Shown here: piece by piece, positions 2,526-24,512 of the stretch | How positions within the stretch are numbered: position 1 is the stretch's first letter | How the letters are laid out: the number at the start of each line of letters is the position of its first letter | Assembly: GCA_038496445.1 (NCBI GenBank) | Contig: JALMLS010000045.1 | Location: 1-33,105, forward strand | From: Trichosphaerium sp. ATCC 40318 | Lineage: Eukaryota; Protista; Tubulinea | Length of the DNA stretch: 33,105 bases | Direction: 5' to 3' | Notes under the pieces: generated by a model | The model's database searches: none | Seen by the model: only the letters and a program-made list of their open reading frames with translations | What the model was told of the DNA's origin: nothing | Program-made: the position numbers and the translations under genes

Positions 2526-4152
2526 ATGGCTACCATGCTGAAAGCAAGGCTTGGACCAGACCAAAAGAAAGTAATCGACGTTCCACGTGACTTTGGCGAA
2601 CGAAGCACCGTTTTAGCAGCGCAGCTGGAGCAAATCGACAGTGGAGAGTCAATAGATGATTATTTGATTGTTCTCAAGCACGCTGAGGGATTCTGTTGGC
2701 TTGTATCACATTACAACAAACCAATAAGCTCAGTATGCGATAAATTGTGTATGGTATCTGAAAAAGAGCGCTTAGAGTGTATACAAGTTGTACGAACATT
2801 TTTGTTTTTGAGTCACACAGGTGTACTTAGCTTGACCTTTTTTTCGCTGAGAATGTCTTTGTTTCGAAATGTGCTCGACTAAAGTAAAACATAGTCAAAT
2901 AAACCAAACAAACAATGTACTTTGTTTATCTGAGAGACTTTACTGGGTTTTTTGTTAACTTTGTTGTTTATCTAGATCTATGACGCTTTAGATTGTTGTG
3001 ATTACTTGGACTTACAAATGCCTTTGTTCATGCAAAGTATAACACGTATGCTTCAGCTTGAAGGATGTGACATAAGAAATGATTTTGTTCAATATTGTTG
3101 GCCTGTAAACTTTTCATCAGCAATTCAAGATGCCTATGAAGGGAGTACGTAACTCTACTAAATGTGTATTCTAATATAGTAAAGAGTGGTTTGGAACACT
3201 GAGAAAAAGAATTATCAGCGGTCCGGTTTATACCCACCAGCCGGCTTTCACGGTAAGTGAGCATACAATAAAATCTCATGGAATTATTTGTATTACCTCT
3301 GGTCGCACTTTTGGTAACAAAAAAGTCACATGTTGGAACTATTCTTTAAACACCAAACAATTCAGAATACTCGGCCTCCTTGATGAGGCTGCAGGTTTTC
3401 ACATTGCTAAAGAATACTTGACAAAGTATTTTTTAGAAGGAACTGCAAAGATAGACAGTGTGATTGTTGCTCACTGTTCATCGTTTTGGAGTTTATTGTC
3501 AGCAAGTGAACTATCAGATATCGAGGCTCAAGCAGGAAGTGATAGATGTCTGGGTAAATTTATTGTCGATAATCTTGTATCTTTCCAATATCTCAAGTGT
3601 TTTATTGACATTGCACAAAGCAACGATAGGGCTCTTGCGTCGAAAATAGAGCATTCAATTCTGTACCATTTAGCTCAAATTGAATCTGCACCTAATTTGA
3701 ACCTTGTTATTGATCTTATGAAGCATATTCCTCCCTCAGAGACTTGGCAAGCAATTAAACGTGATAATTTTGACATAAATGCTGTACCTCCAATACCTTT
3801 CTTTTGGAATGCATTAAAGTACAAAAATAGATCACAAATTACAGATTTTTGATTAATGTAATTCCCTAGGATAGGCATGCTAAGCAATCAGCTTGATTTT
3901 GGTGACTTGAATCATGCTAGGTTTGCGGACTGTATCACTCGCAAAGTTGGTACTTCTGTGACACTCATGAGAGGACAGCACAATCCAAACAGGCAGAGGT
4001 CAAAAGTTTACGTTGCATTGGAACCACTAGATTTAATACCAACTGTACTAAGTGGATGGCGATCAAAATGGAAACAAAAAAAACATACATACAATTTGGA
4101 CTGGTACAGCGCTTTCCTCACATGCAAAGAACCAGTTCTACCTACGAGCTAA
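2526..4152 (+). CDS. Multi-exon protein with a BTB/POZ (Skp1-like) N-terminus and an unknown C-terminal domain
   Basis: The N-terminus (STVLAAQLEQ...IYDALDCCDYLDLQ) resembles Skp1/BTB motifs. A GT-AG intron at 3819-3869 removes the two in-frame stops between ORFs 3418-3852 and 3877-4152, and the paralog has an intron at the same position. The 5' exons are approximate. Confidence 0.55.
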
Positions 4153-4301
4153 TTAATATCATAGGGATTGTGGCTATATACCTTATACTCCTAAAACTGA
4201 TAATTGACAACAGGTCAATTTAGAACTATTCACAAGATTCGCTAGAAAACTGTAAGAAAATTGTGAGAATAAAAACAACTTTCAGAACAACTTAGGTAAC
4301 G

Positions 4302-5208
4302 TTGATCGTGCGCCGTATCAGTGAAAGTGATATGACTGGAGATGGGATAATTTATGTTCATGGACGTGCTGTTGGAAAGAAAAAAGGTTCAAGGTGGCAT
4401 TACCATTTAAATGTAGAAGCTTTTAGAACCTTGTGCCTCATTGATAAAACTGCAGGGTTTATAGTTGCTAAAGAATACTGCAGGGTTTATAGTTGCTAAA
4501 GAATATTTAAGAAAATACTTGTCAAAATCCATTCGGAATAATGAGGTTAAGATAGACGAACAAATCATTGCTGCTTGTTCTCCTTGTTGGAGCGAATTAA
4601 CAAGCACAGAACTTGCAGAAATGGAAGCCCAAAGAGATGGCTGCATAGCAATACTTTTAATAACTAATCTTGTATCTTTCTCATATCTCAAGTGTTTAAT
4701 TGATACTGCACAAAAAGATGATGAACTGCTTGCTAAGAAAATAGAACACAATATAATTTTCAGTGTTAGCCAATCAAAAAGAAGCTTAGCTGACTTAAAC
4801 GAAATTATTGAAGTCGTTGAGCACATACCACCATCAGAAGCTTGGCAAGTAATTTATTGTGATACCTTTAATGTCGATAGGGTACCTGCCATACCTTTTT
4901 TCTGGAAAGCTTTAAAGTACGATTCAGCAAGTCACCTGATTAATAACCAACTTGTTAGAGCTGGGATGCTGAACGGTCAACTAGATTTAGATACAGTACC
5001 ACACAAAAAGTTTGAAGACTGTATTAGGGGCACGCCATCCAAGGGACATCACAAGAGTAGCAACATTGTCTTGCAACCACTATCATTTGTACCAACAGAA
5101 TTGATTGGCTGGAAAGCCAAATGGTCACAGAAGAGACACAGCTACGAATTTGACTGGTACATTCCTCCCTTTGTTTATTCTAATTATTCAGTAGGGATTG
5201 TGGTTTAA
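4302..5208 (+). pseudogene. Partial tandem paralog of the 2526-4152 gene, frameshifted by a 28-bp tandem duplication
   Basis: Clear protein similarity (AGFIVAKEYL/AGFHIAKEYL, NLVSF, HIPPSE-x-WQ, IPFFW-x-ALK, GW-x-x-KW, DWY). No BTB-like N-terminus is recognisable upstream, and the duplication at 4449-4504 shifts the frame. Confidence 0.65.
4449..4504 (+). repeat. Perfect 28-bp tandem duplication (actgcagggtttatagttgctaaagaat x2)
   Basis: Read directly: units 4449-4476 and 4477-4504. Confidence 0.95.
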
Positions 5209-5420
5209 CAACATGAAAACAAAACGAGACAGAATATTTCCAGCTGAGCAGTTGGCTTCAAGTTCCATATACTCCACATCTTAACGCACAAATGGCTATG
5301 TCTAATAAGCCAGACCAAGACAATGTGTTATAGTCTCGTAAAAAGAATACACCTACAATGCTTTGTTTATACATATCCATTGGTTTTGTTTGTAAATTTT
5401 GTGCAAGGAGAAAACACTTT

Positions 5421-6650
5421 TTAATGATTAACATATGGCACTGTCTTTACAATTACAGACCTACAAAAAGGGCAAGTCTTAAGCTTTCGTGTACATGAGG
5501 TACACATAGAATGTCCACATGGATCTATTACCTTCTGCTTAGGACTAGACATACATATGGAACAAATTGTTAAATCTCTTCGCTCCCTCTCTTGACGAGC
5601 AAGTTTGGCTTCTAAAGTTTTCGTGAGTGCTTCCATCTTTTTATATCTAGCCACAAGAACGTCTCTCCTTGGAGGCTTTGAAGGTAAAGGTGACACAACC
5701 ACAGGCGTGCTCTCTCTGTTGTTAGTGCTAGCGAGCTGTGCCAAAAGCTTTTCCCGTAATCGTTGTTCCAAAGAAATACTAGCAGACTTTTCTAATGGTT
5801 GCGTGGACATCTTCAGTTTATCTTCACATAGCACCTTCTCGCATTTCTTCTCGTGTACTTCTGAAAATGCACTCGATCCTGTATCGTGTCGTACTGGTTT
5901 ATGGTCTCGTATTGGTGATGGTGGCATACAAGATGTCTTAGCTGGCGAGGAGTATTTTTTAGGTGGAGAGCATGTTTTAGCTGGAGAGGAGCATGTCTTA
6001 GGTGGCGAGGAGCATTTCTTAGCGTTAGGCAAAGGTTTAGATGCTTCAACTTTCATGAGCTCGTCGCAAAGTTTATCCAAAGCATCTGAAACCCAAAACT
6101 CATTTCCTCTGTTATCACGCGCGTACCATTGTGTAAAATCGCTATTTATCGAAACGTGCTCCATGTATCGCGACTTAATAAACTTTTGAAAGATGTCAGG
6201 AAGACCTTTAGATTGCATGGTGTAGTTGTTCATGAATTGGATGAAATACAAATCTTTAGTGAATACCATCGTTTGTACGTCACCGAGCTTCTTTCTATTA
6301 GTTACCAGGCGTCTATGAAGCTCTGGAGGTACACCTCCCCATGCGTATTCGCCGATTTGTAGAACTGCGAAGAACGATGGACCAGGGCCAAGGAAAACCT
6401 TTGTTATTATGCCTTTTAGTATCAATTGCTTCAGGGAGGGGTTCTCAACGTGAAAATTTACTTCGTCTTTGTATTTAAAGAAATACTGGTCTCTGTCGCC
6501 CAGATCGTAATGTATGACACGCTTAGTGTCTGTTTGGAGAGTGGGAATTAAATTTGGCGGGCAATCATTGTAATTGGTGTATTTATCGCTCAAAGCAACG
6601 TATTGAGAATTTTTATCGACGCCAAGAGCGACTGCCTGAAATTGTGCCAT
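5421..6650 (-). CDS. C-terminal RING-finger (C3HC4) protein, probable E3 ubiquitin ligase, intronless
   Basis: CSICMSSPKQKVIDPCGHSMCTSCTRKLKTCPFC at the C-terminus, preceded by a coiled coil. Internal K-x-CSSP tandem repeats lie at ~5925-6020. Confidence 0.85.
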   Translation of the reverse strand: MAQFQAVALGVDKNSQYVALSDKYTNYNDCPPNLIPTLQTDTKRVIHYDLGDRDQYFFKYKDEVNFHVENPSLKQLILKGIITKVFLGPGPSFFAVLQIGEYAWGGVPPELHRRLVTNRKKLGDVQTMVFTKDLYFIQFMNNYTMQSKGLPDIFQKFIKSRYMEHVSINSDFTQWYARDNRGNEFWVSDALDKLCDELMKVEASKPLPNAKKCSSPPKTCSSPAKTCSPPKKYSSPAKTSCMPPSPIRDHKPVRHDTGSSAFSEVHEKKCEKVLCEDKLKMSTQPLEKSASISLEQRLREKLLAQLASTNNRESTPVVVSPLPSKPPRRDVLVARYKKMEALTKTLEAKLARQERERRDLTICSICMSSPKQKVIDPCGHSMCTSCTRKLKTCPFCRSVIVKTVPYVNH

Positions 6651-10138: not shown

Positions 10139-10370
10139 TTTGCATAACAAATGAGACCATTTTAGTTTGTCTTCTTTATTTTTTTGAGCCGAAAAAAAAC
10201 GGCAAATTTTGAGGGTGAAAGCTCGTCTGAAGTTGTTCGTTCTTTTCTGTATAGTCCTCTATCGATAATAAGATAGTACTTGCTACACCACAGTGACACT
10301 GAATGTGCACCGTTCGCTCCATAAACCTTACGGTTTATCGTATTCAATAGTTAAACAACTTCGCAAGAGT

Positions 10371-10976
10371 ATGACACACGCATACACCCATTACGATGGG
10401 AGGTTATCTGCCCAGAAGGGAGTAACCACTGCAATTCTTAAGTTCAAGTTATCTATGTCAGTATATGCTGAATACGACAAACAATCAACGCAAGGCTCGA
10501 GTTTATCGATGTTTACGAACATCGGCGGGAAAACATTTAGTAACGGTAACATAACAACACAAAACTCTTTACTAGAACCCTACAACACGTCATCTCACAT
10601 AAATAATAACTACACCTCTCTACGATCGTATTCTAAAACCCCTCTAATCAAATACAAAATTTCAAAAAATTTCGGCATAATCGGCGTAAACATGGCCAAG
10701 TTTCAGGTATATTCTCCACAATATCTCCACTTTCTAATTCGCCGCAAATGGGAACACAAAAAAATCCAAAAAACCACCCAACGCCATAAAAAACCAAGTA
10801 AAATTGTTAGTAAAAAATGTAAAAAAACTTCTGCTGAAAAAATAAAAGTATCCAACTCTCAAATCGTATCAAATGACGTTCTAAAACATCACAAGACCTC
10901 TCCTACCATAGTTCACAAGAAAACAATTTTTACGTCTGCTTTGTCCAAAAAAGGGGAAAAAAACTTTGGGGTCTAA
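10371..10976 (+). other. Long upstream ORF (201 codons from the first ATG) in the retroelement 5' region
   Basis: Stop-free frame 10293-10976 with first ATG at 10371. It is Lys-rich and low-complexity with no recognisable domain, and stops 5 nt before the ATG at 10982. Confidence 0.4.
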
Positions 10977-11017
10977 GTTTTATGCAACCCAAATTCATTA
11001 TAAAGTTACCAACAAAC

Positions 11018-13005
11018 ATGTCACAACGTCTAGTATTAACCATCCCTCATCTGGATAGCTCCAGAGCCAACCGCAAAGGTAGAGGTCCTAATAAACGTCG
11101 TCGTAGAGAAGATGATCACTACGATGACGATGATGACGGTTCTTCCTTTTTGCCTGACGTCTCACAAGAATGCAAACGGTTTGACAATATATCTTCCTTA
11201 CAACATAGCATTTTCCAAACAAATCCATCTTTTCAATACTTCCCACAAAATTCTCACTTTATTAGCTTCCTCAACGAACCATTCGAAACTGTTGATGGGT
11301 ATCCCCTTATTGTTGTCGTCAATGATGCCTCGATTACCTCTAGAGGTATTTCGGTGTCTGTCGAAGATATTGCAGAAGGCATCGAAATCAACAGGTTCCA
11401 AATGGGACCGGAATTTATGCCTATGGTCTACGTCTTTTTACCTGACGCCACCTCTTGCCGCGAACTTGCCCTTCGCTTGGAACGACGCCCAAAAACCCAT
11501 GTCTTCTATGCCAAAAACACCGATTGTGCGGTTGCTACTTTGATCTCAGTCACCAGAGGTATCGTAATCGCAACCTCTCCTTTTTACATAAATCGTCATC
11601 TTAAAAATTTCCTCTTTCAAAATCAAACGTCCTTTGCCTTTAAAAACCAATTCTGCACCACGAACTATATCACCTTATCAGTTAAAATAGTTCTCAAAAA
11701 ATTTCCAAAAAAAATATTTTTTCTTTTTCCTCGTACCTCTCTAAAACATCCATCTTCAAATTTCCCTTTCAAAATCACAAGTTTACCAATTCTACATGAC
11801 TATATAAATACAAAAACTCATTTTAAAATAGGAAAGCTCATCGATCCATCCATTACCAACATTGTGGGTGCCCACAATCGTAAAGCTAATCGCCGCAAAG
11901 TCCGCAATAACTCAGTTATGTTGGCGGCTTCTTGGAATAAGAATCATCAATATGGCGGTGCGGTCTTCGTAGACGCTCATTCTAGGAATGATGCGGTTCG
12001 AATGACCAACACGTTCGGCGAAGACAACTGGACCATGTTTCTCCAAGTTTCTTACAAACCACATCACAAGTACACCCTTATCGTTCCCAAGATGCCACGT
12101 GGTTTGCCAATCGCCACTGGTCTCAAATATGTCCACAAGCTTTTTAAAGATAGGCTTAACACCAAAGATCTTGCACCTGCAATGGATCCTCGCAAAGATG
12201 ACGCCATAGATGGATGCGTTTATGTCACTCTTACCAAAAATGCTTTTGAAGATGAAATTACGTATCTTGCCTCTCCTGAACTTTACTATAACAGGTCTCT
12301 CCTCGACAGACTACCAATGGAACCTATGAACGGATTCAACTACAAGGAGGGTAGATGTACCAATGACGGTAAACCCGTTAAACCAAATAACCCAGCTCTC
12401 CTCACTATGCATAACGAAATAGTTTATGTTAAAGGAATGATTCAAGGTCTCTCAGGAAACGTGGTCTCTCTCCTCAAAGTGCAAGTATTTTTTTACCTTT
12501 GTAAACCTTCATACAACCAATATTCTCACATTCATAATTTAGTATCAATGACACTCGTGAACTTGTCACTAGAGAAATCCTTAAAAACGGCGGCAACATC
12601 AACAACGGAAACTCCTCCAACGCAACAAACACCTCTAAAGACGTCAAAGATAAGAAAGAGAAAAAAGAAAAGAAGAAAACTACCTATATTGATGTCACCG
12701 AAGACAATGAAATCTCATGGTCTGAAGTTGCAGATGACTCTGACGAGGAGATGTCAGATGTCAAAAATATTATCGAAAAAGAAAATATCGATCCAAACAC
12801 GGGTCTCGGTTCAGGAAGAGTTCGTAGAGTTGCTACCAGGTCATCCAGATCTCGCTCTAAGGCAAGAGCAGAGACTGGAAAAAAATCCAACACCCCTAAG
12901 CCTAATCTCGATGACTACTTGGGTGACGTCGAATGTGACATCGGTCTCAGCAAAGCTACTCAAGAAAAATTGGATAAGCTCTCGGCACCTAAACAAGACG
13001 CATAA
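11018..13005 (+). CDS. Retroelement ORF1, spliced form (~521 aa): exons 11018-11178, 11266-11558, 11832-12480, 12543-13005
   Basis: Three AT-rich blocks with splice ends interrupt protein-like sequence: gtttga..ttctcac..attag (87 nt), gtatcg..aaaatag (273 nt), gcaagt..ttctcac..atttag (62 nt, GC-AG). Removing the third joins the protein-like frame INDTRELVTREILKNGG...KQDA*. No RRM or CCHC motif was recognised. Confidence 0.6.
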
Positions 13006-13052
13006 AAAACGTACTAACTTACAAATATATTGGTATTCAAGGCTCTGTTTCA

Positions 13053-13577
13053 TCATAAATAAAATAATTGCTCCTCTTTTGTCTTCTTTATTCTACAAAA
13101 CATTTGATTCTTGTCTATATGTACGACACTCACTTGTTCACAAAATTCAATACAATGTCTTTCTTACCATTATACTCCCCAAAGGTATAATGTGCCTTAT
13201 GCGATGTGTTCTCATTTTCCCCTCTGCTATTCGTAACATAATTTTGCACGCCTCTCTCTCTTTCTGCTCGCAACATATACACATGACTCTCTCCACGCGC
13301 AACATATACACTGCGGCGGTTTTCGTCATAATCATATATAAATGCTTTTTTCTTTGCGCTATAAACAATGGAAAACGTTATAATACCAATATCTGTAATT
13401 GTACACACAATGGAATAAACTTTGCTCGCATTTCTAGAATTAGTTACTATCACACCCATGTTCGTAAGTTTACAGCCCTTGTAGACGAGAACACAAGCGT
13501 ATCTCTGGTTTTTAAAATAAATAATTATGTTAAGCAATAAACATAATTACGGTCTTCGTTCCAGAACTAAAGGGCAT
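13053..13577 (-). CDS. Putative spliced antisense gene inside the retroelement (~145 aa): exons 13577-13551, 13504-13134, 13092-13053
   Basis: ATG at 13577, then minus-strand introns GTAATT..cttaac..CAG (13550-13505) and GTGAGT..TTTTGTAG (13133-13093). The first intron joins in phase with the 135-codon antisense ORF. Confidence 0.4.
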
Positions 13578-16500
13578 TCTGGTACAAGACCTGGTACTAA
13601 CGGTACTGAACACAGAGAAGTAGAAATCCGGAATATTGCAAAAAGATATAACAATGGAGGTTTCTCTAAAAATGAAATAACGAACAAACAATTAGAATTC
13701 GCCATCAGAGCGGACAACACAGACCACATAGACATTAACGGCGACAGAAGCTGTATTAAAGTATGTTCAATCAATTGTCGTGGTAAATGGTTTATTAGCT
13801 CGGGTTTAATTATGTTACAAGCCAGGAAAATGCAAGCAGATGTCATCATGGTTCAAGAAATGATGTGCAATAAATCAGAATTACAATACGATACAGATCC
13901 AGTCCTCCTAGACAAATATAAAATGTACACCAACCTACTTACGATAGAAGACAAAAGAGAGAAATGGTTTCGTGGGCAATTAACCAAACTGAGCTCTAGG
14001 CTCACGGAAGAAGAAAGAAATATAGCAATAAGTAAACTAAAATCGCAAAAACAAAAACTTAAAGTATTTAAAAAATCGGAGGGTATCAGCATCTTTATTC
14101 GTAAAGAACTAGTAGACAAAGTCAAAGAAGTTTACTATGACACATCCAGAAAACTCATGATTGTTGCCATTGGTGATGAAAATACCACCATAATCCTTGT
14201 GAATATATACTCACCAAGTAGTGGATCCAAAGAACAAGACTCCTTTTTTCGCAAAGTAAATAACATAATAAAAGTTTACACAAATAAATTCAATAGTACT
14301 AAGAAACACGTTATCATGGGTGGTGATTTCAACTCGGTCCTTAACAAAGACACAGACAGATGGTATGCAATAAATCATAATATGCAATTCTCAGATCACA
14401 CATCGGAAGCCCTTACGGACCTAATGTTAGATCATGATCTAGTGGCAGCTCATAGAATATTATACCCAGAAAAAGAAATGTACATGAGAGTGGGCATGAA
14501 ATACATCAATAAAGAACACATATACAGCTGCAAAGCGCTTCTTGATTTCTTCCTCGTTAAAAAAACAGATGAACTTAGAATATGGAACTTCTCTATCGAC
14601 GATGATCCGTTCACAGACAGTGACCATTACCCTATCTTACTTGAATTTGAATGGTGGTGGAAAGGGAACATTGACGGGAGTTAAACTAGAACAACCTAAA
14701 GATAGCCTTAACACTAAAAACGACAGTCTCGGATTACTCAACGACAAATTAATCAGTGATACACTTCACCGTAACTTCAACAGATGGCTAAACAATGATT
14801 CGCTAGATAGCCTAGACAAGTTAGCAAGTAATTTAACGGAAGAAATCTACGACAATTGCAAAGATATAGTGGGCACCAAACATCGCGAATTCCGTAAAAC
14901 CAGAACATCTAATGACCCTGAATTACGAAAATGGGGCAACCTAAAACATAGAATGCAAAAGCTAATGAATAACTCTAAAGATCCTATTGACATGTCAAAC
15001 TCTGAAGTAAAATCATGCTACAATATCCTCCAAAATATCCGCAAAGAATGCAATAAATTAACTATACATGATGAAGACAAACTTATTAAAAACATAAAAG
15101 AAAAAGGAATCAATGAGGATCTAGGTGACTACATTAAAATCATAATTAAACATATTAAAATTAAACGTGATCAAAGAGCCGTAACATATAAAGCAAATTC
15201 AATCAAAGAAAAAATCAACAATCTTATTGACAAGTTCCACGACAACCCTAAAGCCTTCTTTGACAATTTGTTACAACGGAAAGGAGCTACAGTCAATAGT
15301 CCTCTCAAAGATCCGGATACGGGAATAGTCACAAATAACCACAAAGAAAAAATGTCACTATTTGTCAAAGTGTGGGACAAAATACTTAATAAAAAAGACA
15401 CTATACCCACCGGTGATCCTTATTGGTTTAATGAAGAGGTAGATACTTCCAAAGTTAAAATGGATACTAATACATTCTCTATGAAAGAATTAAAAGAAGC
15501 CATCGAAGCCACTAAAAGTTGGAAACAACAAGGCGAAGATAGAATACCTGCAGAGGTTTATAAAAAACTTAATGAACAATACTTAAAAATAATGCTTGGT
15601 CTGTTCAACGGATGCTACACCAAAGGTTACATGCCGGACACATGGAAAAGATCATACCTATACTTAATACATAAGAGGGGATCCACATCAACAGACCCCA
15701 AAAATTACCGTCCTATAGCATTATTGGCGGTCCAATATAAAATTTACACAAGATTACTTTACAACAGAATTCTAGAATATGTGGATGGTAATAACATCTT
15801 AGCTAATGAACAAAATGGTTTCAGACCTAAAAGGTCCACTGTAGGACACATCACCACACTTATAAATATCATTGAGGACAGAAGACAATTTGCCGAAAAA
15901 AAAAAGACTGGCAATGTTATTTATTGACATCAGTAAAGCGTTCGATTCAGTAGAACACTGGTCTATGATTAAAACACTCAAGTATTACAACTTCCCTACC
16001 ACTATGATCGAAGCAATCTCAGCGCTGTACAAAGGTTGCCTCGGGAAAATCCTTACTGTAGACGGTCTCTCTGAACAGTTTAACATCACCAATGGAGTCA
16101 AACAAGGAGACATCTTATCGCCCATGTTGTTCGTTCTTTGCCTCAACCCAATTATAAAATATATCTCCAACAACATCCAAGGATACCAATTTGCCAACAA
16201 TTCCAAAATACAAATCTCCATCTTAGCATATTGTGACGATATAGTTCTGATAGCCGAAAATAAAAACAACTTATCCAATGCCATGAATCACTTCCTTAAC
16301 TTCTGCGACTATAACGGTTGGAAAGTTAACCAAGCTAAAACAAAATACATGGGTTCAGAGGACGCAGACCCTCTCGTGCTCATTAGAAATAACGTAAACG
16401 TCGAATTTCCAGGTATCGACATTGGTAAATCATATAAATACTTAGGCATTTATATAAATATCAACTTAGACTGGAACCGAGATGCACAACTAGTTAAGTC

Positions 16501-18616
16501 TGCATACATCTATAGACTCAATCTAATATCAGGCCGAGCTGTACCGTATGATTGTAAGATAATAATAATAAACAGAGTATTAAATGAAGCCCTCAAATAT
16601 CATATGAACTTTTACTCATTCCCGTCTGAGATTATGAAAAAATTGAAAAAAGCCGTAGTACAAATGTTGTTCAGATCAATACCAATGACTTCTAGATCGA
16701 AACATTGCCAATTATGGGCTAGTCGTAATTTAGACGGTAAAGAAGTTGTACCACCTCTCTTGGCCAATCAAATAGCGCTAGTCGCCAACACATACAAGTT
16801 TGCCTTGAATGCCGAAAACGGTTCGCTACCACAAGTCACGACCAAACAAAGACTCGCTGATAACACCTTCCTTCCTTCAATTAATCGTAAAGGCCTTCGG
16901 CAAGCAGCCACCACACACAATGCTAAAACCATTATTATTAAAAAAAATGACGACAGAATCACAATGTACAAAAAAATGTTACTCGGTATGAACATGTCAT
17001 GCGTAACCAGTATCACAGAAGCTCCCCCTTTACCAATTATGTTAAACGAGCAACAATGCGAAACTCTTAAAGATATAGGACTCTTGGATGACATCTCTAA
17101 AGTCAATGTTATCCGCAACGGTAGATTAGTGGACAGAAAAGAAATATGCAATCTCTTTGGCAAAACAGTTTCCGAATACAAATATCATGCACTCGCCAAG
17201 GTCATCACAGAAGGCAACAACAAAGCAATTAAAAATACACTTAACAAGGCAACCTTATCCAGTAATAGCATCGCGACTATCAATAGTAGTATAGACGATG
17301 ACTGGTACTGGCACGACGATACCGTCTGTGTTTGGACAGACGGATCTAGAATCCAAAAGAAAAACGGCAATGTGGCTGGTGTTGGGGTCTTCTTTGGAAA
17401 AGGCAATCTCAATAATCTAGCCTGTAGAGCCGTTACCAAACAAGATATTGACGCAGCTGAATTAGAAGCAGCTATAGTAGCTGTTAAAGTAGTACCTATT
17501 GACCAACCAATGCACCTTTTTACGGACTCAACTTACGTCATTAAAATGGCTTGTAAAGACAAGGTCTCCCCTTTCTCTTCTAACGCCATTGCCATCAAAG
17601 AACTTCGAGACGCGCTTAAAGATAGAACTAATAAAGGAGGAGAATGCCTCATACACAAAGTACCAAGTCATTACAATAAAAAAGTCAAGGCATACAAAAA
17701 AGAACCTAACCGCATGAAAAGATTAATGTCTGAAGTCAGCACTCTTAAAAATTCGTTTGGTAGTAATATCGAATGGATACTCGAAGGTAATGAACAAGCG
17801 GATAAACTCGCAAATCTAGGAAGAGAAGCAGACGAAACAGAAGGGAAAATACTTAACGGAACCCTAGATTACACGCTATACAACTCACAACTTAAACCGG
17901 TCGAGGGCAACATACGTAAATATATAGCGGACAACTTCAAAGAAAAAGCTAATAAAGAACTTATCAAGCGTAGACCTATTATGGCCAAAGCAGACATGGA
18001 TCTGTCGGCGATAAATTTTGGTAAACCCGACTTCACCATGAAAAAAATTAATACTACATTATTTAAAGCCAGAAATGGTAAACTATGCACACGTGAAATT
18101 ATGCACAAAAGGTCCATTGAAAACTGGCCAGGTGTTAATAAAGAAAAATACGCGGACAATGTTTGCATGTTCTGCAATGAAATTGAATCTAACCTACACG
18201 TGATAGCAGATTGCCCTAAATACGAAAGCTCCCGACAAGAAGCAGCTAAAGAAATTAAAGAAGTCATGAAGGAATATCTACCTCGTGCCAACTACAAAAG
18301 ATTTTGGTTGTCGTCTAATGACATTTGCTCGTTTCGACGTAACACTGCGCCAGATCTAGAAACTAAAGAACTAATATCCAAAGCCTACATACCTAAAAAA
18401 CTAGTCAACAATCTCAAAGATCAGGGATGCGATTCAGTCGCTGTCTCCAAGGCGCTGAAAAAAGTTCACCTTGTTCTAGCAAATATGATACACGTAATTT
18501 ACCAAAAAAGATGTAAGCTCCACGAACAATGGTGGATAGACTACAATACTGAATTCGTCGAATGCCCGGAAATGGAGGATATATACCGTCGTTTCGCTGG
18601 CACGCCAATCACGTAA
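13527..18616 (+). CDS. Retroelement ORF2 (APE endonuclease, reverse transcriptase, RNase H, C-terminal CCHC), split by two +1 frameshifts
   Basis: APE: SINCRG, VQE, NIYSP, GGDFN, LDFF, SDHYP. RT: NYRPIALL, QNGFRP, DISKAFDSV, GVKQGDILSP, YCDD, YKYLGI. RNase H: VWTDGS, AELEA, FTDSTYV, GNEQADKLA. CCHC: CMFCNEIESNLHVIADC. Frame changes occur at ~14650-14684 and at the A10 run 15896-15905. Confidence 0.93.
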
Positions 18617-18898
18617 ATCATATATCACTACGCCCTGGGGCCGCTTAGGCGAGCCCTGAAGGGCTACAATGGGTTATTATCCGAACTATCTTCTTCCATG
18701 TTAAAATTCTCTACTGGAGAATTCGGAGAAGATACACGGCGGCTACCGCCGCCGTGACTTACGTGAGAGCCGACTATCGGCCTTCGGAGAAGGAGACAAA
18801 ACAAGAGACTTGTTTTGACTTTTACCCATTTAATACAATACAATACAATTTTGAGCCAAATATTTCGCTTATTTCAGCAAGGTAAAACGCACGTTACC

Positions 18899-21665: not shown

Positions 21666-21859
21666 TGTAACGCTAAGAATTCCTATAGAACTCGGATAGA
21701 ATTCGTATGGAATTACTTGAGGAACTCTCAATGAGAAGTAGAAAATATATGAAATTTCCCATAAATTTCTATCTGTTTTCTATCAGTTATCTACTCTACT
21801 TAACTTGTAAATATTAATAAATTAGAACTTACATCAACCTCAACAACTGTTCCGTTACA
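21666..21859 (+). repeat. 5' LTR
   Basis: Terminal inverted ends tgtaacg...cgttaca; identical by eye to 24319-24512. Confidence 0.95.
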
Positions 21860-21861
21860 TT

Positions 21862-21876
21862 TGGCGACACGATCTG
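21862..21876 (+). promoter_or_regulatory. Primer-binding site
   Basis: TGGCGACAC... starts 2 nt after the LTR and is complementary to a tRNA 3' end (..GCCA). The tRNA identity was not determined. Confidence 0.7.
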
Positions 21877-22045
21877 ATTTGATACCCTGTGGACCCTCCA
21901 ATTTGGAGATCTAAACGGATAAAATACTTTTGGAGATAAATACTTAAAGGCACATATCGTTGTAGGTTCGGTTAAATAAGCCTACCTGAATAGCTACGTT
22001 CTGTATGACATTAGAGTCCCTAAGAATTCTGCAAAATTAGAAATC

Positions 22046-23077
22046 ATGAGCAGACGAGGAAATCAAGAAAATAATCCACAGCGTAGACAGGTTCAGGCCG
22101 CTCCACAACAACCGCCACAACAACCGCCACAACAACCCGCCCCTCAACAACCAGACCCACAAACGCCTCCCGACACACCTCAGAAGTCTACACAATCAAG
22201 ACAAAGTGGAACACAAATTAGTGCTTATCAAACACGTTTGTTAAACAAATTGACACTGGCTTCAAAGGCAAAAGATGTGGTTAAGAAAAGAAGAAAACGA
22301 TCAGTTACACCCTCATTTGTCAACAAATTTGAGCAAATCAAGCGAAGGACCACTCAACAATCACAGTTATCTGAAGTAGAAAAACTGGCAGATATTTTAT
22401 CAAAGCCTAAAATCCCAGATGACTTACCGTTATTCTATGGAAATGGTGATGATGTTATGGCATGGTTGAGAGCTATGATGGCGTTTTCCGAAATATATGG
22501 TTGGCAAGATGAACAATGGTATCAGGCAATCACTTCTCATCTACGAGATGGCGCACTGAATACATGGTGTTGTTTACCTCCACACCAACGTGTCAATATT
22601 GACAGTGTCATTGCAGTATTGATTGACGGCTATGCAGAAGATGAACGCCCAGACAAAGCTATGGATCGCTTTGAATCAACCAAACAAGGATCTGATACCG
22701 TACAAAACTATTATGGCAGACTCAAAGGAAAAGCAATTGATGCCGACATGAACCCAACTACAAATCCAAATGATAGAAATACATTCATTCGAGTATTTAG
22801 AAGAGGGCTCAACAAGAACATAAGAGATAAAATTGATCATAAATTCTATGTGGATATTGCTGACATATTGGCGGATGCTAAGAAACAAGAACAAAAATTA
22901 AAAAGTCAACAGTCACAAGTTGTTAGCGCTATAAGCTCAACACAAGAACAAGAAGATATGATTACTAAAATGGCAGAGGCAGTGGTATTGGCACTTCAAA
23001 AATCGGAAAGATGTTATAGGAAGCACCCAAGTTTGGCTCCTAAGGGTTGGTCACCCGCTAATAGATCAAAAAACTAG
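22046..23077 (+). CDS. Retrotransposon Gag
   Basis: Capsid-like motifs FYGNGDDVMAWL, LRDGALNTW, KQGSDTVQNYY, FRRGL, with a Pro/Gln-rich N-terminus. Confidence 0.85.
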   Translation: MSRRGNQENNPQRRQVQAAPQQPPQQPPQQPAPQQPDPQTPPDTPQKSTQSRQSGTQISAYQTRLLNKLTLASKAKDVVKKRRKRSVTPSFVNKFEQIKRRTTQQSQLSEVEKLADILSKPKIPDDLPLFYGNGDDVMAWLRAMMAFSEIYGWQDEQWYQAITSHLRDGALNTWCCLPPHQRVNIDSVIAVLIDGYAEDERPDKAMDRFESTKQGSDTVQNYYGRLKGKAIDADMNPTTNPNDRNTFIRVFRRGLNKNIRDKIDHKFYVDIADILADAKKQEQKLKSQQSQVVSAISSTQEQEDMITKMAEAVVLALQKSERCYRKHPSLAPKGWSPANRSKN

Positions 23078-23091
23078 ACTCAGGTGTTGGC

Positions 23092-24290
23092 TTGGGCTTA
23101 GCCAACATTTATATCATACAGCCCACTCAAACACGTGATGTTGATCCTAACCACGTGTTACTACCCAACCTCCTAAAAACAATAACCAGCTTGGCAATGG
23201 CTTTGGAAACAATCAACAAGTATTCTTATATTATTTTTGGCCAGAATGATAATTTGGATATTCGATTGAACGCTTTTATACTGGTTTTACACAGTTTTCC
23301 TTATGAAGTTTTTCTTGGCACTGTTTTGATTACAAACCTTGGCGGAACACAAGATGCTAACAAGTCAAAATGGATAGTTCAAGGCAGGTCAGGTATCGTT
23401 GAAATACTCTTTGTGTGCAGGCAACATCATTGGGCAAACTCTGTTTGTACTATTTTACTTGCCACATTCAATATGAGTTATTTGACAAGCAAAACGCTCC
23501 ACAACAATCGTTACCAGTGCTTCAACCAGTTTAAAACTTTGGTTGTGCTATCTATACTTATGGACAAATCCTTGGAGGAAGTCTCAGATGATTTTATGTC
23601 AATTATTCAGCCTGATCAGCTGTATAAGCTTCCGAAACTCCTTGGTTATTTGCACGATGTCTTTGCAGTTGGAAAGAAACCTGGACATATATTAACAGTC
23701 AAGAACAGGATCAAAGTACCTGGAGATGTCGTATCATTCCATATTACACCTTACCAAGTTTCGCTTAACGATGCAGACATAATTATTGAAGAAAACACTG
23801 AAAGCATGCTAAAGAATGGTGTCATTCGACCTTTTGAGTCAGAATGTGCGACGGTGGTGTCAGTACCAAAATCAGATGGTACTTTACGATTTTTTTTTTG
23901 TGGATTACAGAGTTATTCAAATGCCTATCCGCTAAACATACGTGGACCAATCTTTTCAAAGATTGATCGTTCATTTTGATATTGGCTTATTTGGTTTCTA
24001 TGGCAATGATGTTGATGTTCACTTGTATAACAAGGTTGGAACTTATGAAATTAACTGCATCTCAACATTTAAAAGCTCACAACTCTTTGTTACGCTTGGT
24101 CAAATGCAACAATTGATCACTACTTACTTATATCAAACCTCTTTAAGGGGGGAGGAATCTGGAGACATCTACCTCGGACACAATGAACATTAGACTAGGT
24201 GGATATGTTACAAAAGAGAACTGAAAACAACATTGAAGTTTACAATTTGGACAACAACCTCATGCGATTACCTTTCCAATCAAATATTCA
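23092..24290 (+). pseudogene. Degenerate pol remnant (protease-like region and start of RT)
   Basis: PYQVS...ESMLKNGVIRPFES...VVSVPKSDGTLRF matches the Ty3/Gypsy RT N-terminus. No YxDD, RNase H or integrase core was found. Confidence 0.75.
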
Positions 24291-24305
24291 AGAAAACTCT
24301 CTTTC

Positions 24306-24318
24306 AAGGGGGGAGGAA
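24306..24318 (+). promoter_or_regulatory. Polypurine tract
   Basis: aaggggggaggaa directly abuts the 3' LTR. Confidence 0.9.
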
Positions 24319-24512
24319 TGTAACGCTAAGAATTCCTATAGAACTCGGATAGAATTCGTATGGAATTACTTGAGGAACTCTCAATGAGAAGTAGAAAATA
24401 TATGAAATTTCCCATAAATTTCTATCTGTTTTCTATCAGTTATCTACTCTACTTAACTTGTAAATATTAATAAATTAGAACTTACATCAACCTCAACAAC
24501 TGTTCCGTTACA
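24319..24512 (+). repeat. 3' LTR
   Basis: Identical copy of the 5' LTR. Confidence 0.95.

What the first reader, a model, noticed from the sequence alone, without database searches (positions are those of the whole stretch)
10982..13540. Intron-retaining LINE: ORF1 has three sense-strand spliceosomal introns, yet the unspliced frame stays open and runs into the ORF2 start (possible splicing switch)
Seen: introns at 11179-11265 (87 nt) and 11559-11831 (273 nt) are both multiples of 3 and stop-free. The third (12481-12542, 62 nt, GC-AG) changes frame. Spliced RNA gives a ~521 aa ORF1p ending at 13005, more than 500 nt before ORF2. Unspliced RNA reads on for 353 more codons of non-protein-like sequence and stops at 13540, overlapping the ORF2 ATG at 13527. 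At a rough 5% stop chance per codon that is about 1e-8 by chance. Known: RNA-mediated copying normally erases sense introns (Penelope-like elements are the known exception), L1 ORF2 is made by termination-reinitiation, and L1 proteins show cis preference. Inference: spliced RNA makes only ORF1p, while only unspliced RNA delivers ribosomes to ORF2. The RT would then copy only intron-containing RNA, which keeps the introns, sets the ORF1:ORF2 ratio and may avoid NMD. I do not know of this mechanism being described for APE-type elements.
Basis: partly seen in the sequence, partly recalled or inferred. Interest (0 to 1): 0.92.

Follow-up and report, generated by a model that had tools for sequence, protein, structure and literature searches.

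The report
Intron-keeping LINE with coupled reading frames
A jumping gene of the LINE type carries ordinary introns in its first gene, and its unspliced reading frame stays open right up to the start of its second gene, a layout also seen in distant relatives that suggests splicing decides which RNA makes the copying enzyme and so gets copied.

Summary
ORF 10982-13540 has 852 codons. The three proposed introns have GT/GC-AG ends and 5-6% G, against 18-21% in the exons. The frame is stop-free far beyond chance: exon 4 has 0 stops where 7.8 are expected from synonymous resampling, and the spacer has 0/173 against 10 and 12 in the other frames.

New here: a 25%-identical ORF1 on a metagenome contig (L001) has an intron at the same position, phase (2) and length (62 nt), with no segment at intron 2. 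Its unspliced frame also stays open through the tail exon.

In five related loci the upstream open frame ends between a 14-nt overlap with the ORF2 ATG and direct abutment on it (ATGA, TAAATG), with L001 reaching its ATGA only in a third frame. In a sixth (L010) it is fused in frame.

Best reading, about 0.58: spliced RNA makes ORF1p. Only unspliced RNA brings ribosomes to ORF2, so intron-bearing RNA is the one copied.

Splicing and reinitiation are inferred, not shown. This copy has two ORF2 frameshifts.

Other first-stage notes report LINE ORF1 introns elsewhere in this genome, unchecked. Splicing is absent from the two LINE reviews read. An intron in Tad transcripts (1996) could not be read.

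The parts
10182..10190 (.). Candidate target-site duplication, left copy (TTTTGAGCC)
   Evidence: The same 9-mer occurs at 18849-18857, directly after the 3' tail. On its own this is weak: the two flanks share an 8-mer by chance with P about 0.15.
10191..18848 (+). Whole LINE, about 8.66 kb: leader, ORF1, spacer, ORF2, 3' UTR and tail
   Evidence: APE, RT and RNase H domains. Candidate TSD and (ACAAT)3 tail. It sits between a minus-strand gene start at about 10150 and a downstream gene read as PEX10 from its N-terminal motif and RING domain (start 18889).
10293..10976 (+). Stop-free leader frame ('ORF0'): 227 codons, first ATG at 10371, ending 5 nt before the ORF1 ATG
   Evidence: 0 stops against 15 and 17 in the other frames, P about 1e-7. 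The translation is not protein-like and the codon score is 0.11. L001, L005 and L010 have stop-free leaders in frame with ORF1.
10982..13540 (+). Unspliced ORF1 frame, 852 codons
10982..11178 (+). ORF1 exon 1: basic and acidic N-terminus
   Evidence: Codon-usage score 0.39 in frame 0. G is 18%.
11179..11265 (+). Candidate intron 1: 87 nt (3n), GTTTGA..TTATTAG, stop-free in frame
   Evidence: G is 5%. CTCAC branch-like motif at -13. The donor is weak. The alignment with L001 neither supports nor refutes it.
11266..11558 (+). ORF1 exon 2: RRM-like domain
   Evidence: It aligns to L001 ORF1. The equivalent L001 segment folds in beta-alpha-beta-beta-alpha-beta order at pLDDT 65-79.
11559..11831 (+). 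Candidate intron 2: 273 nt (3n), GTATCG..AAATAG, stop-free in frame
   Evidence: G is 5%. It has 0 stops against 6 and 5 in the other frames. L001 ORF1 has no such segment. By eye, the spliced junction ...SVTRG|KLIDPSITN matches L001 ...KVVGQAKIDASDINN. It is about 4 times longer than the host introns.
11832..12480 (+). ORF1 exon 3: second domain plus a helix
   Evidence: 25% identical to P0121 residues 461-631 (whole-library E 1e-4, pairwise E 3e-10). The equivalent region of P0121 has a weak RRM_1 hit.
12481..12542 (+). Intron 3: 62 nt (3n+2), phase 2, GCAAGT..TTTAG, frame-changing
   Evidence: L001 has a GTACGT..TTTGCAG intron at 5521-5582, also 62 nt and phase 2. Both lie 11 codons plus 2 nt after the aligned 'IQ'. 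G is 6%. CTCAC at -18 in both.
12543..13005 (+). ORF1 exon 4: charged tail, read in frame +2 after splicing, TAA at 13003-13005
   Evidence: Codon-usage score is 0.50 in frame +2 and -0.12 in frame 0. There is no ATG, GTG or TTG in this frame before 12751, so most of the tail can be reached only by splicing.
13006..13526 (+). ORF1-ORF2 spacer, stop-free only in the unspliced ORF1 frame
   Evidence: 0/173 stops against 10/173 and 12/173. No Rfam family at a meaningful score.
13527..13540 (+). Stop/start overlap: ORF2 ATG at 13527, TAA of the unspliced frame at 13538-13540
   Evidence: Comparable geometry in relatives: 13-nt overlap in L007, ATGA in L005 and L001, TAAATG in L002.
13527..18616 (+). 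ORF2 (APE, RT, RNase H, C-terminal Cys motif), split over three frames in this copy
   Evidence: Pfam hits Exo_endo_phos, RVT_1 and RNase_H. The frameshifts lie within about 14640-14680 and in the A10 run at 15896-15905.
18617..18848 (+). 3' UTR (richer in G+C, with GC-rich self-complementary stretches seen by eye; not folded) ending in an (ACAAT)3 tail at 18835-18849
13130..13537 (-). Antisense ORF of 135 codons, in exact codon register with the open + frame (rival feature)
   Evidence: There is no support that it is a gene: no Pfam hit, best PDB hit E 0.04, AF2 pLDDT 35.6.

Best explanation
This is an APE/RT/RNase H LINE of about 8.66 kb whose RNA-binding ORF1 carries sense-strand spliceosomal introns.

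Spliced RNA: removing the last intron (62 nt, phase 2, GC-AG) moves translation into the frame that encodes a charged C-terminal tail. ORF1p (533 aa) then ends at 13005, 521 nt before ORF2.

Unspliced RNA: the ORF1 frame runs on without a stop through all three introns, through exon 4 in its +1 frame and through the spacer. It ends at a TAA that overlaps the ORF2 AUG by 14 nt. Only on unspliced RNA, therefore, do translating ribosomes reach the ORF2 start, where ORF2 is begun by termination-reinitiation. In relatives with in-frame layouts ORF2 may instead be made as a fusion or by read-through.

Consequences: ORF2p acting on the RNA that made it would copy intron-bearing RNA. That preserves the frame-switching intron. 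It also works as a filter: any other intron upstream can survive only if it is a multiple of 3 and stop-free.

Shown here: the anatomy, the statistical excess of open frame, the avoidance of stops at synonymous sites, and the conservation of the intron and of the stop/start geometry in relatives.

Inferred: that splicing occurs and is partial, reinitiation, cis preference, and control of the ORF1p:ORF2p ratio.
For: Anatomy and statistics:
- The ORF and intron coordinates hold.
- Introns have 5-6% G against 18-21% in exons.
- The tail codes in frame +2 (score 0.50), not frame 0 (-0.12).
- Exon 4 has 0 stops in the unspliced frame against 7.8 expected, with 0 of 5000 synonymous redraws reaching 0. 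The control frame has 20 against 18.7.
- The spacer has 0/173 stops against 10 and 12.

The L001 relative:
- ORF1 is 25% identical and APE 28% identical.
- It has an intron at the same site, phase and length. Its unspliced frame is open for 886 codons, including the whole tail exon (0 stops against 2.8 expected, P 0.035). A frame ends in ATGA on the ORF2 ATG.
- L001 has no segment at the place of window intron 2.

Other loci:
- L002: a non-protein-like frame is open for 192 codons (P about 5e-7) across an RRM-like exon that lies in another frame. It ends TAA directly before the ORF2 ATG.
- L005: a 117-nt, 3n, stop-free, G-poor GT..AG candidate intron sits inside the ORF1 RRM, and the ORF1 stop overlaps the ORF2 start as ATGA.
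- L007: a conventional ORF1 overlaps the ORF2 ATG by 13 nt.
- L010: leader, ORF1, G-poor non-protein-like sequence and APE form one frame.
- L006: no upstream open frame, with 27-31 stops per frame, which serves as a control.

A CTCAC branch-like motif lies 13-18 nt before the 3' splice site in four of these introns.

Known mechanism: stop/start coupling (UAAUG) is documented for the LINE SART1 (PMC3894237).
Against: - There is no RNA evidence for any junction.
- Donors of introns 1 and 2 (GTTTGA, GTATCG) are poor matches to the host's GTACGT/GTAAGT. Intron 2 is about 4 times longer than the host introns in the window.
- This copy has two frameshifts in ORF2, so it is dead or mis-assembled.
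- In L001 the unspliced frame stops 204 nt before ORF2 and a third frame carries on to the ATGA. A match to the model needs one indel in a contig of about 2x coverage.
- In L001, L002 and L010 the upstream frame is the ORF2 frame itself. That fits fusion or read-through as well as reinitiation.
- From general knowledge, reinitiation after an 850-codon ORF is usually inefficient in eukaryotes.
- The stop-free leader is not explained by the model.
- The spacer segment 13130-13537 shows codon-position periodicity and an in-register antisense ORF. Part of the openness there could have another cause.
- Other genomic copies could not be examined.
Confidence: 0.58

Rival explanations
1. Ordinary alternative splicing gives two ORF1 isoforms. 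The long unspliced-frame extension, with hydrophobic segments in 13130-13537, would be a working protein domain. The frame would then be open because it codes, not because ribosomes must reach ORF2.
For: Segment 13130-13537 has coding-like codon-position periodicity in the + frame (70% pyrimidine at position 3). Its translation has three hydrophobic stretches. Other first-stage notes in this genome mention hydrophobic blocks in LINE polyproteins (unchecked).
Against: No homolog was found for this part. The codon-usage score is about 0. The introns and 13006-13129 have flat composition yet are also stop-free. The extensions in L001, L002 and L010 share no sequence and differ in character, but all end at, or run into, the ORF2 start.
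Confidence: 0.12
2. There is no splicing. The 852-codon ORF is the real ORF1, with low-complexity inserts, and the frame +2 'tail' is a relic or an overprinted frame.
For: The frame is intact. Donors 1 and 2 are weak. No RNA data are available.
Against: The frame +2 tail has the best codon-usage score of all ORF1 parts and has no start codon of its own before 12751. L001 has a canonical GTACGT..CAG intron at the same site, phase and length, followed by a similar charged tail in the shifted frame. The 273-nt segment is missing from L001 ORF1.
Confidence: 0.08
3. The open frame serves RNA survival or transit, not ORF2 initiation. Ribosomes running the full length of unspliced RNA would prevent NMD or long-3'UTR decay, or keep the RNA unfolded. 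ORF2 would start by another route, such as an IRES.
For: The leader is also stop-free, which a pure ORF1-to-ORF2 coupling model does not need. The non-coding parts are G-poor on the sense strand.
Against: The open frame ends within a few nucleotides of the ORF2 ATG in the window and in L002, L005 and L007, and in L001 through a third frame. That points to a link with initiation. Survival of the RNA and coupling are not exclusive.
Confidence: 0.12
4. A real antisense gene (13130-13537, minus strand) keeps the in-register plus frame open in the spacer. The rest is chance.
For: The 135-codon minus ORF is in exact register. The plus frame has only 1 antisense-stop triplet in 136 codons, against 13 and 7 in the other frames. 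An earlier first-stage note (s1-390854) reads it as a gene.
Against: No family hit. The best PDB hit has E 0.04. AF2 mean pLDDT is 35.6. The codon score is -0.16. There is no antisense ORF in the spacer of L001. It cannot explain exon 4, the introns, 13006-13129 or the relatives.
Confidence: 0.04

Closest known systems
Translational coupling between ORF1 and ORF2 of LINEs (SART1 UAAUG; the L1 termination/reinitiation model)
   Same: The upstream frame ends on or next to the ORF2 AUG. Here the overlap is 14 nt, and relatives show ATGA, TAAATG and a 13-nt overlap. SART1 coupling is described in PMC3894237.
   Different: Here the frame that reaches the ORF2 start is not the frame of mature ORF1p. 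It is the unspliced read-through frame, which is mostly non-protein-like.
Ty1/copia subgenomic GAG RNA made by splicing (Arabidopsis EVD; PMC5580714)
   Same: Splicing would give an RNA that makes only the structural protein. Unspliced RNA would serve both as the mRNA for the enzymes and as the template.
   Different: That case is an LTR retrotransposon with a single Gag-Pol ORF, and its splicing is coupled to premature termination. Here the element is a non-LTR element with a frame-switching intron and stop/start coupling. No termination signal could be assigned.
Penelope-like elements, the textbook intron-retaining retroelements
   Same: Sense-strand spliceosomal introns are kept through retrotransposition.
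   Different: This element has APE, RT and RNase H. It has no GIY-YIG or telomerase-like RT hit.
Introns seen in transcripts of Tad (Neurospora LINE; Sewell and Kinsey 1996) and L1, as cited in PMC1636488
   Same: They are APE-type LINEs whose transcripts can be spliced. From my own knowledge, not tested here, Tad also has an RNase H domain.
   Different: The Tad paper is not held, so the position and role of that intron could not be compared. L1 splicing is generally regarded as aberrant (my own knowledge). No open-frame or coupling design is mentioned in the texts I could read.

Membership tests
APE-type non-LTR retrotransposon (LINE) | ORF2 with an apurinic-type endonuclease followed by a reverse transcriptase | tested here: met
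   Exo_endo_phos E 5.6e-10; RVT_1 E 7.2e-27 and 2.5e-7; RNase_H E 2.1e-11.
APE-type non-LTR retrotransposon (LINE) | Upstream ORF1 encoding an RNA-binding protein, syntenic with ORF2 | tested here: met
   A homologous ORF1 sits upstream of a homologous ORF2 in L001. The RRM signal itself is weak: Pfam E 0.0078 in P0121 and a beta-alpha-beta-beta-alpha-beta order at pLDDT 65-79.
APE-type non-LTR retrotransposon (LINE) | Target-site duplication and a simple-repeat or poly(A) 3' tail | tested here: inconclusive
   A 9-bp repeat TTTTGAGCC flanks the element and there is an (ACAAT)3 tail. A shared 8-mer arises by chance with P about 0.15.
APE-type non-LTR retrotransposon (LINE) | Multiple copies in the genome | not testable with these tools
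   Only this window is readable. No second copy lies within it.
Spliceosomal intron (for 12481-12542) | GT/GC-AG ends, a branch-like motif, and length like the host introns | tested here: met
   GCAAGT..TTTAG, CTCAC at -18, 62 nt. Host PEX10 introns are 53-64 nt.
Spliceosomal intron (for 12481-12542) | Same position and phase in a homolog | tested here: met
   The L001 intron 5521-5582 is phase 2 and 62 nt. Both lie 11 codons plus 2 nt after the aligned IQ.
Spliceosomal intron (all three) | Spliced junctions seen in RNA | not testable with these tools
   No transcript data are available.
Termination-reinitiation coupled ORFs | The stop of the upstream frame overlaps or abuts the downstream AUG | tested here: met
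   ATG at 13527 and TAA at 13538-13540. Relatives.
Termination-reinitiation coupled ORFs | ORF2 translation depends on translation of the upstream frame | not testable with these tools
   This needs a reporter assay or ribosome profiling.
Penelope-like elements | GIY-YIG endonuclease and a telomerase-like RT in a single ORF | tested here: not met
   Pfam finds APE, RVT_1 and RNase H only.
Tad1 / I-type RNase H-bearing LINE clades | Phylogenetic placement of the RT within the clade | not tested
   No reference sequences were at hand. The closest database protein is P0001 at 26% identity, unnamed.

The most novel reading that the evidence does not exclude
A group of distantly related APE-type LINEs, in several hosts, would use a conserved frame-switching spliceosomal intron in ORF1 as the switch between two RNAs. 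One is a spliced mRNA that makes only ORF1p. The other is unspliced RNA, the only one on which ribosomes reach ORF2, by stop/start coupling or in-frame fusion, and hence the only one that is copied. This would explain how sense introns survive retrotransposition. It would also act as a filter, so that every other retained intron, the spacer and perhaps the leader are multiples of 3 and stop-free.
Probability: 0.5. Interest if true: 0.88.

Novelty: new variant of a known kind. Interest (0 to 1): 0.8.

Why it matters
How LINEs translate ORF2 and set the ORF1p:ORF2p ratio is a long-standing open question. Retention of sense introns by an RNA-copied element is regarded as exceptional and is mainly known from Penelope-like elements.

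This element and its relatives offer a natural system with testable predictions. The design links splicing, translation and choice of template in one layout. It gives a simple selective reason for introns that are multiples of 3 and stop-free. It would extend to non-LTR elements the strategy of making the structural protein from a spliced RNA, so far known from retroviruses and Ty1/copia.

There is also a practical point. Gene finders will mis-annotate such elements as giant ORFs.

Tried and rejected
- Homolog search with the whole 852-aa ORF in the word-indexed database found nothing. The full HMMER scan gave a single hit, P0121.
- An APE alignment used against the protein database found nothing. 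Against JGI metagenome contigs it gave only two contigs of 1.4 kb, of no use.
- Rfam on the window, the leader and the spacer found no family. In particular there was no HDV-like ribozyme at the 5' end.
- The antisense ORF as a gene: nothing supportive from Pfam, PDB or AF2.
- An internal poly(A) signal after the spliced ORF1 stop: AATAAA occurs 19 times on the sense strand against 16 expected, so the copy at 13058 says nothing.
- uATG distribution in the leader: ATGs occur in all three frames, with no pattern.
- BLASTP of the two charged tails gave no alignment. A short motif seen by eye is listed only as noticed in passing.
- AF2 of the ORF1 domain with a 3-row alignment had mean pLDDT 46, too low for a fold search.
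- A canonical GT donor at 12485 instead of GC at 12481 gives a 58-nt intron and a stop after three codons. It was rejected because the GC donor matches the L001 intron in site and phase and joins the well-scoring tail frame. It cannot be excluded without RNA.
- The host organism could not be identified with the tools left.
- The 1996 Tad transcript paper could not be read.
Full report
**What is in the window**

An APE-type LINE occupies about 10191-18848 on the + strand.
- ORF2 starts at ATG 13527 and ends at 18616. It carries Exo_endo_phos, RVT_1 and RNase_H domains.
- In this copy ORF2 is split over three frames. One frameshift lies within about 14640-14680. The other is in an A10 run at 15896-15905.
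- The element ends in a 3' UTR that is richer in G+C, followed by an (ACAAT)3 tail.
- A 9-bp repeat, TTTTGAGCC, flanks it at 10182-10190 and 18849-18857. The repeat is well placed but weak on its own, since the two flanks share an 8-mer by chance with P about 0.15.
- The element sits in a very short gap between two diverging host genes: a minus-strand gene and a gene I read as PEX10.

**Check of the observation**

The ORF 10982-13540 has 852 codons. The three proposed introns have these ends and lengths:
- 11179-11265: GT..AG, 87 nt.
- 11559-11831: GT..AG, 273 nt.
- 12481-12542: GC..AG, 62 nt.

Their G content is 5-6%, against 18-21% in the four exons. Joining the exons gives a 533-aa protein that ends at 13005.

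A codon-usage score trained on ORF2 gives 0.39, 0.19 and 0.28 for exons 1-3 in frame 0. For exon 4 it gives 0.50 in frame +2 but -0.12 in frame 0. So the tail really codes in the shifted frame. That frame has no ATG, GTG or TTG before 12751, so most of the tail can only be reached by splicing.

**Is the open frame more than chance?** Yes.

| Region | Stops in unspliced frame | Comparison | Estimate |
|---|---|---|---|
| Spacer | 0/173 | 10/173 and 12/173 in other frames | Poisson about 1e-5 |
| Intron 2 | 0 | 6 and 5 in other frames | P about 4e-3 |
| Exon 4 | 0 | 7.8 expected from synonymous redraw | 0 of 5000 redraws reach 0 |
| Exon 4, control frame | 20 | 18.7 expected | no deviation |

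For exon 4 I kept the tail protein and redrew synonymous codons from the element's own usage. Synonymous sites of exon 4 are therefore biased specifically against stops in the unspliced frame.

**Relatives**

The whole-ORF search in the word-indexed database found nothing. A full HMMER scan gave one hit, P0121, on the ENA metagenome contig L001.
- Its ORF1 domain is 25% identical to exon 3.
- The ORF downstream is an APE that is 28% identical from residue 2 on.
- So ORF1 and ORF2 are syntenic in two very different elements. That places ORF1 inside the mobile unit.

L001 has a canonical GTACGT..TTTGCAG intron at 5521-5582.
- It is 62 nt and phase 2.
- In both elements the donor lies exactly 11 codons plus 2 nt after the aligned 'IQ'.
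- After it a charged tail follows in the shifted frame and ends at 6090.
- The unspliced frame is open from 3512 to 6170. That is 886 codons and includes the leader (P about 5e-7) and the whole tail exon (0 stops against 2.8 expected, P 0.035).
- A third frame, open from 5670, ends in ATGA on the ORF2 ATG at 6374.
- The unspliced ORF1 frame is also the ORF2 frame, with only two TAA codons between them.
- The contig name indicates about 2x coverage, so an indel error is possible.

L001 has no segment at the place of window intron 2. The alignment says nothing about intron 1.

Loci found through ORF2 similarity are not biased by the state of their upstream frames:
- **L002.** A non-protein-like frame is open for 192 codons up to TAA|ATG of ORF2. 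It passes through an RRM-like exon that lies in another frame (P about 5e-7).
- **L005.** A 1167-codon upstream ORF ends in ATGA on the ORF2 ATG. It contains a 117-nt, 3n, stop-free, G-poor GTACGC..CTTAG candidate intron inside the last RRM.
- **L007.** A conventional CCHC ORF1 overlaps the ORF2 ATG by 13 nt.
- **L010.** The leader, an RRM-type ORF1, 415 nt of G-poor non-protein-like sequence and the APE form one frame. It has a candidate phase-2 intron of 128 nt (3n+2).
- **L006, L008, L009.** These are controls. L006 has no upstream frame (27-31 stops per frame). L008 and L009 have ordinary L1-like ORF1s.

A CTCAC branch-like motif lies 13-18 nt before the 3' splice site in window introns 1 and 3 and in the L001 and L005 introns.

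**Reading**

An upstream frame ending at the ORF2 start is the conventional layout in this group, as in L007.

In the window and L001, and apparently in L002, the mature ORF1p ends early because of a frame-switching intron. A non-protein-like frame is nevertheless kept open to restore the stop/start geometry.

Only unspliced RNA delivers ribosomes to ORF2, and ORF2p acting in cis then copies intron-bearing RNA.

The model also explains why the switching intron is conserved while introns 1 and 2 are not. RNA that lacks introns 1 and 2 but keeps intron 3 would still work. It further explains why any retained upstream intron must be a multiple of 3 and stop-free.

Splicing, reinitiation and cis preference remain inferences.

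**Caveats and rivals**
- Donors 1 and 2 are weak, and intron 2 is long for this host, whose PEX10 introns are 53-64 nt with 16-23% G.
- Segment 13130-13537 shows codon-position periodicity and an antisense ORF in exact register.
- That ORF has no family hit, no convincing PDB match and an AF2 pLDDT of 35.6. The L001 spacer has no antisense ORF.
- The same periodicity allows a coding, hydrophobic + frame extension, which would give isoforms by intron retention.
- The leader is also one stop-free frame (10293-10976, P about 1e-7) and ends 5 nt before the ORF1 ATG. In L001, L005 and L010 the leader is in frame with ORF1. The coupling model does not need this.
- The in-frame layouts of L001, L002 and L010 leave fusion or read-through as alternatives to reinitiation.

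**Literature**

Searches for introns in LINE ORF1 found no description. A review of how LINE proteins are made (PMC3894237) and a general review (PMC2881922) do not mention splicing.

PMC1636488 notes that introns were seen in transcripts of L1, Tad, kangaroo-1, Penelope and Athena, with their importance unknown. The Tad paper could not be read.

The closest functional parallel is the spliced GAG-only RNA of Ty1/copia (PMC5580714).

Other first-stage notes report introns in LINE ORF1, stop-free leaders and in-frame ORF1-pol fusions on other pieces of this same genome. They are unchecked and I could not read those sequences.

**Verdict**

This is a new variant of a known kind of element. Interest 0.8.

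Noticed in passing
window 10293-10976 (+): The leader is a single stop-free frame of 227 codons (first ATG at 10371) that ends 5 nt before the ORF1 ATG. It overlaps the open part of the ORF1 frame (from 10877) across A6 and A7 runs. L001, L005 and L010 have stop-free leaders in frame with ORF1.
   Followed up: partly
window 13130-13537 (-): An antisense ORF of 135 codons lies in exact codon register with the open plus frame. The segment has codon-position periodicity. There is no evidence that it is a gene.
   Followed up: yes
window about 14640-14680 and 15896-15905: There are two frameshifts in ORF2, the second in an A10 run. They are either real decay or homopolymer assembly errors.
   Followed up: partly
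window 18617-18849: The 3' UTR is richer in G+C than the rest of the element, with GC-rich self-complementary stretches seen by eye (not folded). It ends in (ACAAT)3, which suggests a 3' end recognised by the RT.
   Followed up: no
window 21666-24512: Two identical 194-nt direct repeats (21666-21859 and 24319-24512) flank ORFs 22046-23077 (Retrotrans_gag hit) and 23092-23979. This looks like a short LTR element with gag but no pol.
   Followed up: no
window 12670-12720 and L001 about 5940-5975: Both charged tails carry a similar short motif, T-[YV]-[IV]-D-[VL]-[TS]-E-D-[NE]-I. It resembles a SUMO-interaction motif. It was seen by eye only, and BLAST finds no alignment.
   Followed up: partly
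L010 112-3135: In a Logan contig the leader, an RRM-type ORF1, 415 nt of pyrimidine-rich G-poor sequence and the APE form one uninterrupted frame. This is an in-frame version of the same design.
   Followed up: partly
window 10151-10190 and 18858-18888: The LINE sits in a gap of only about 70 bp between two diverging host genes (a minus-strand gene and the gene read as PEX10). That points to a compact genome and to insertion into a shared promoter region.
   Followed up: no
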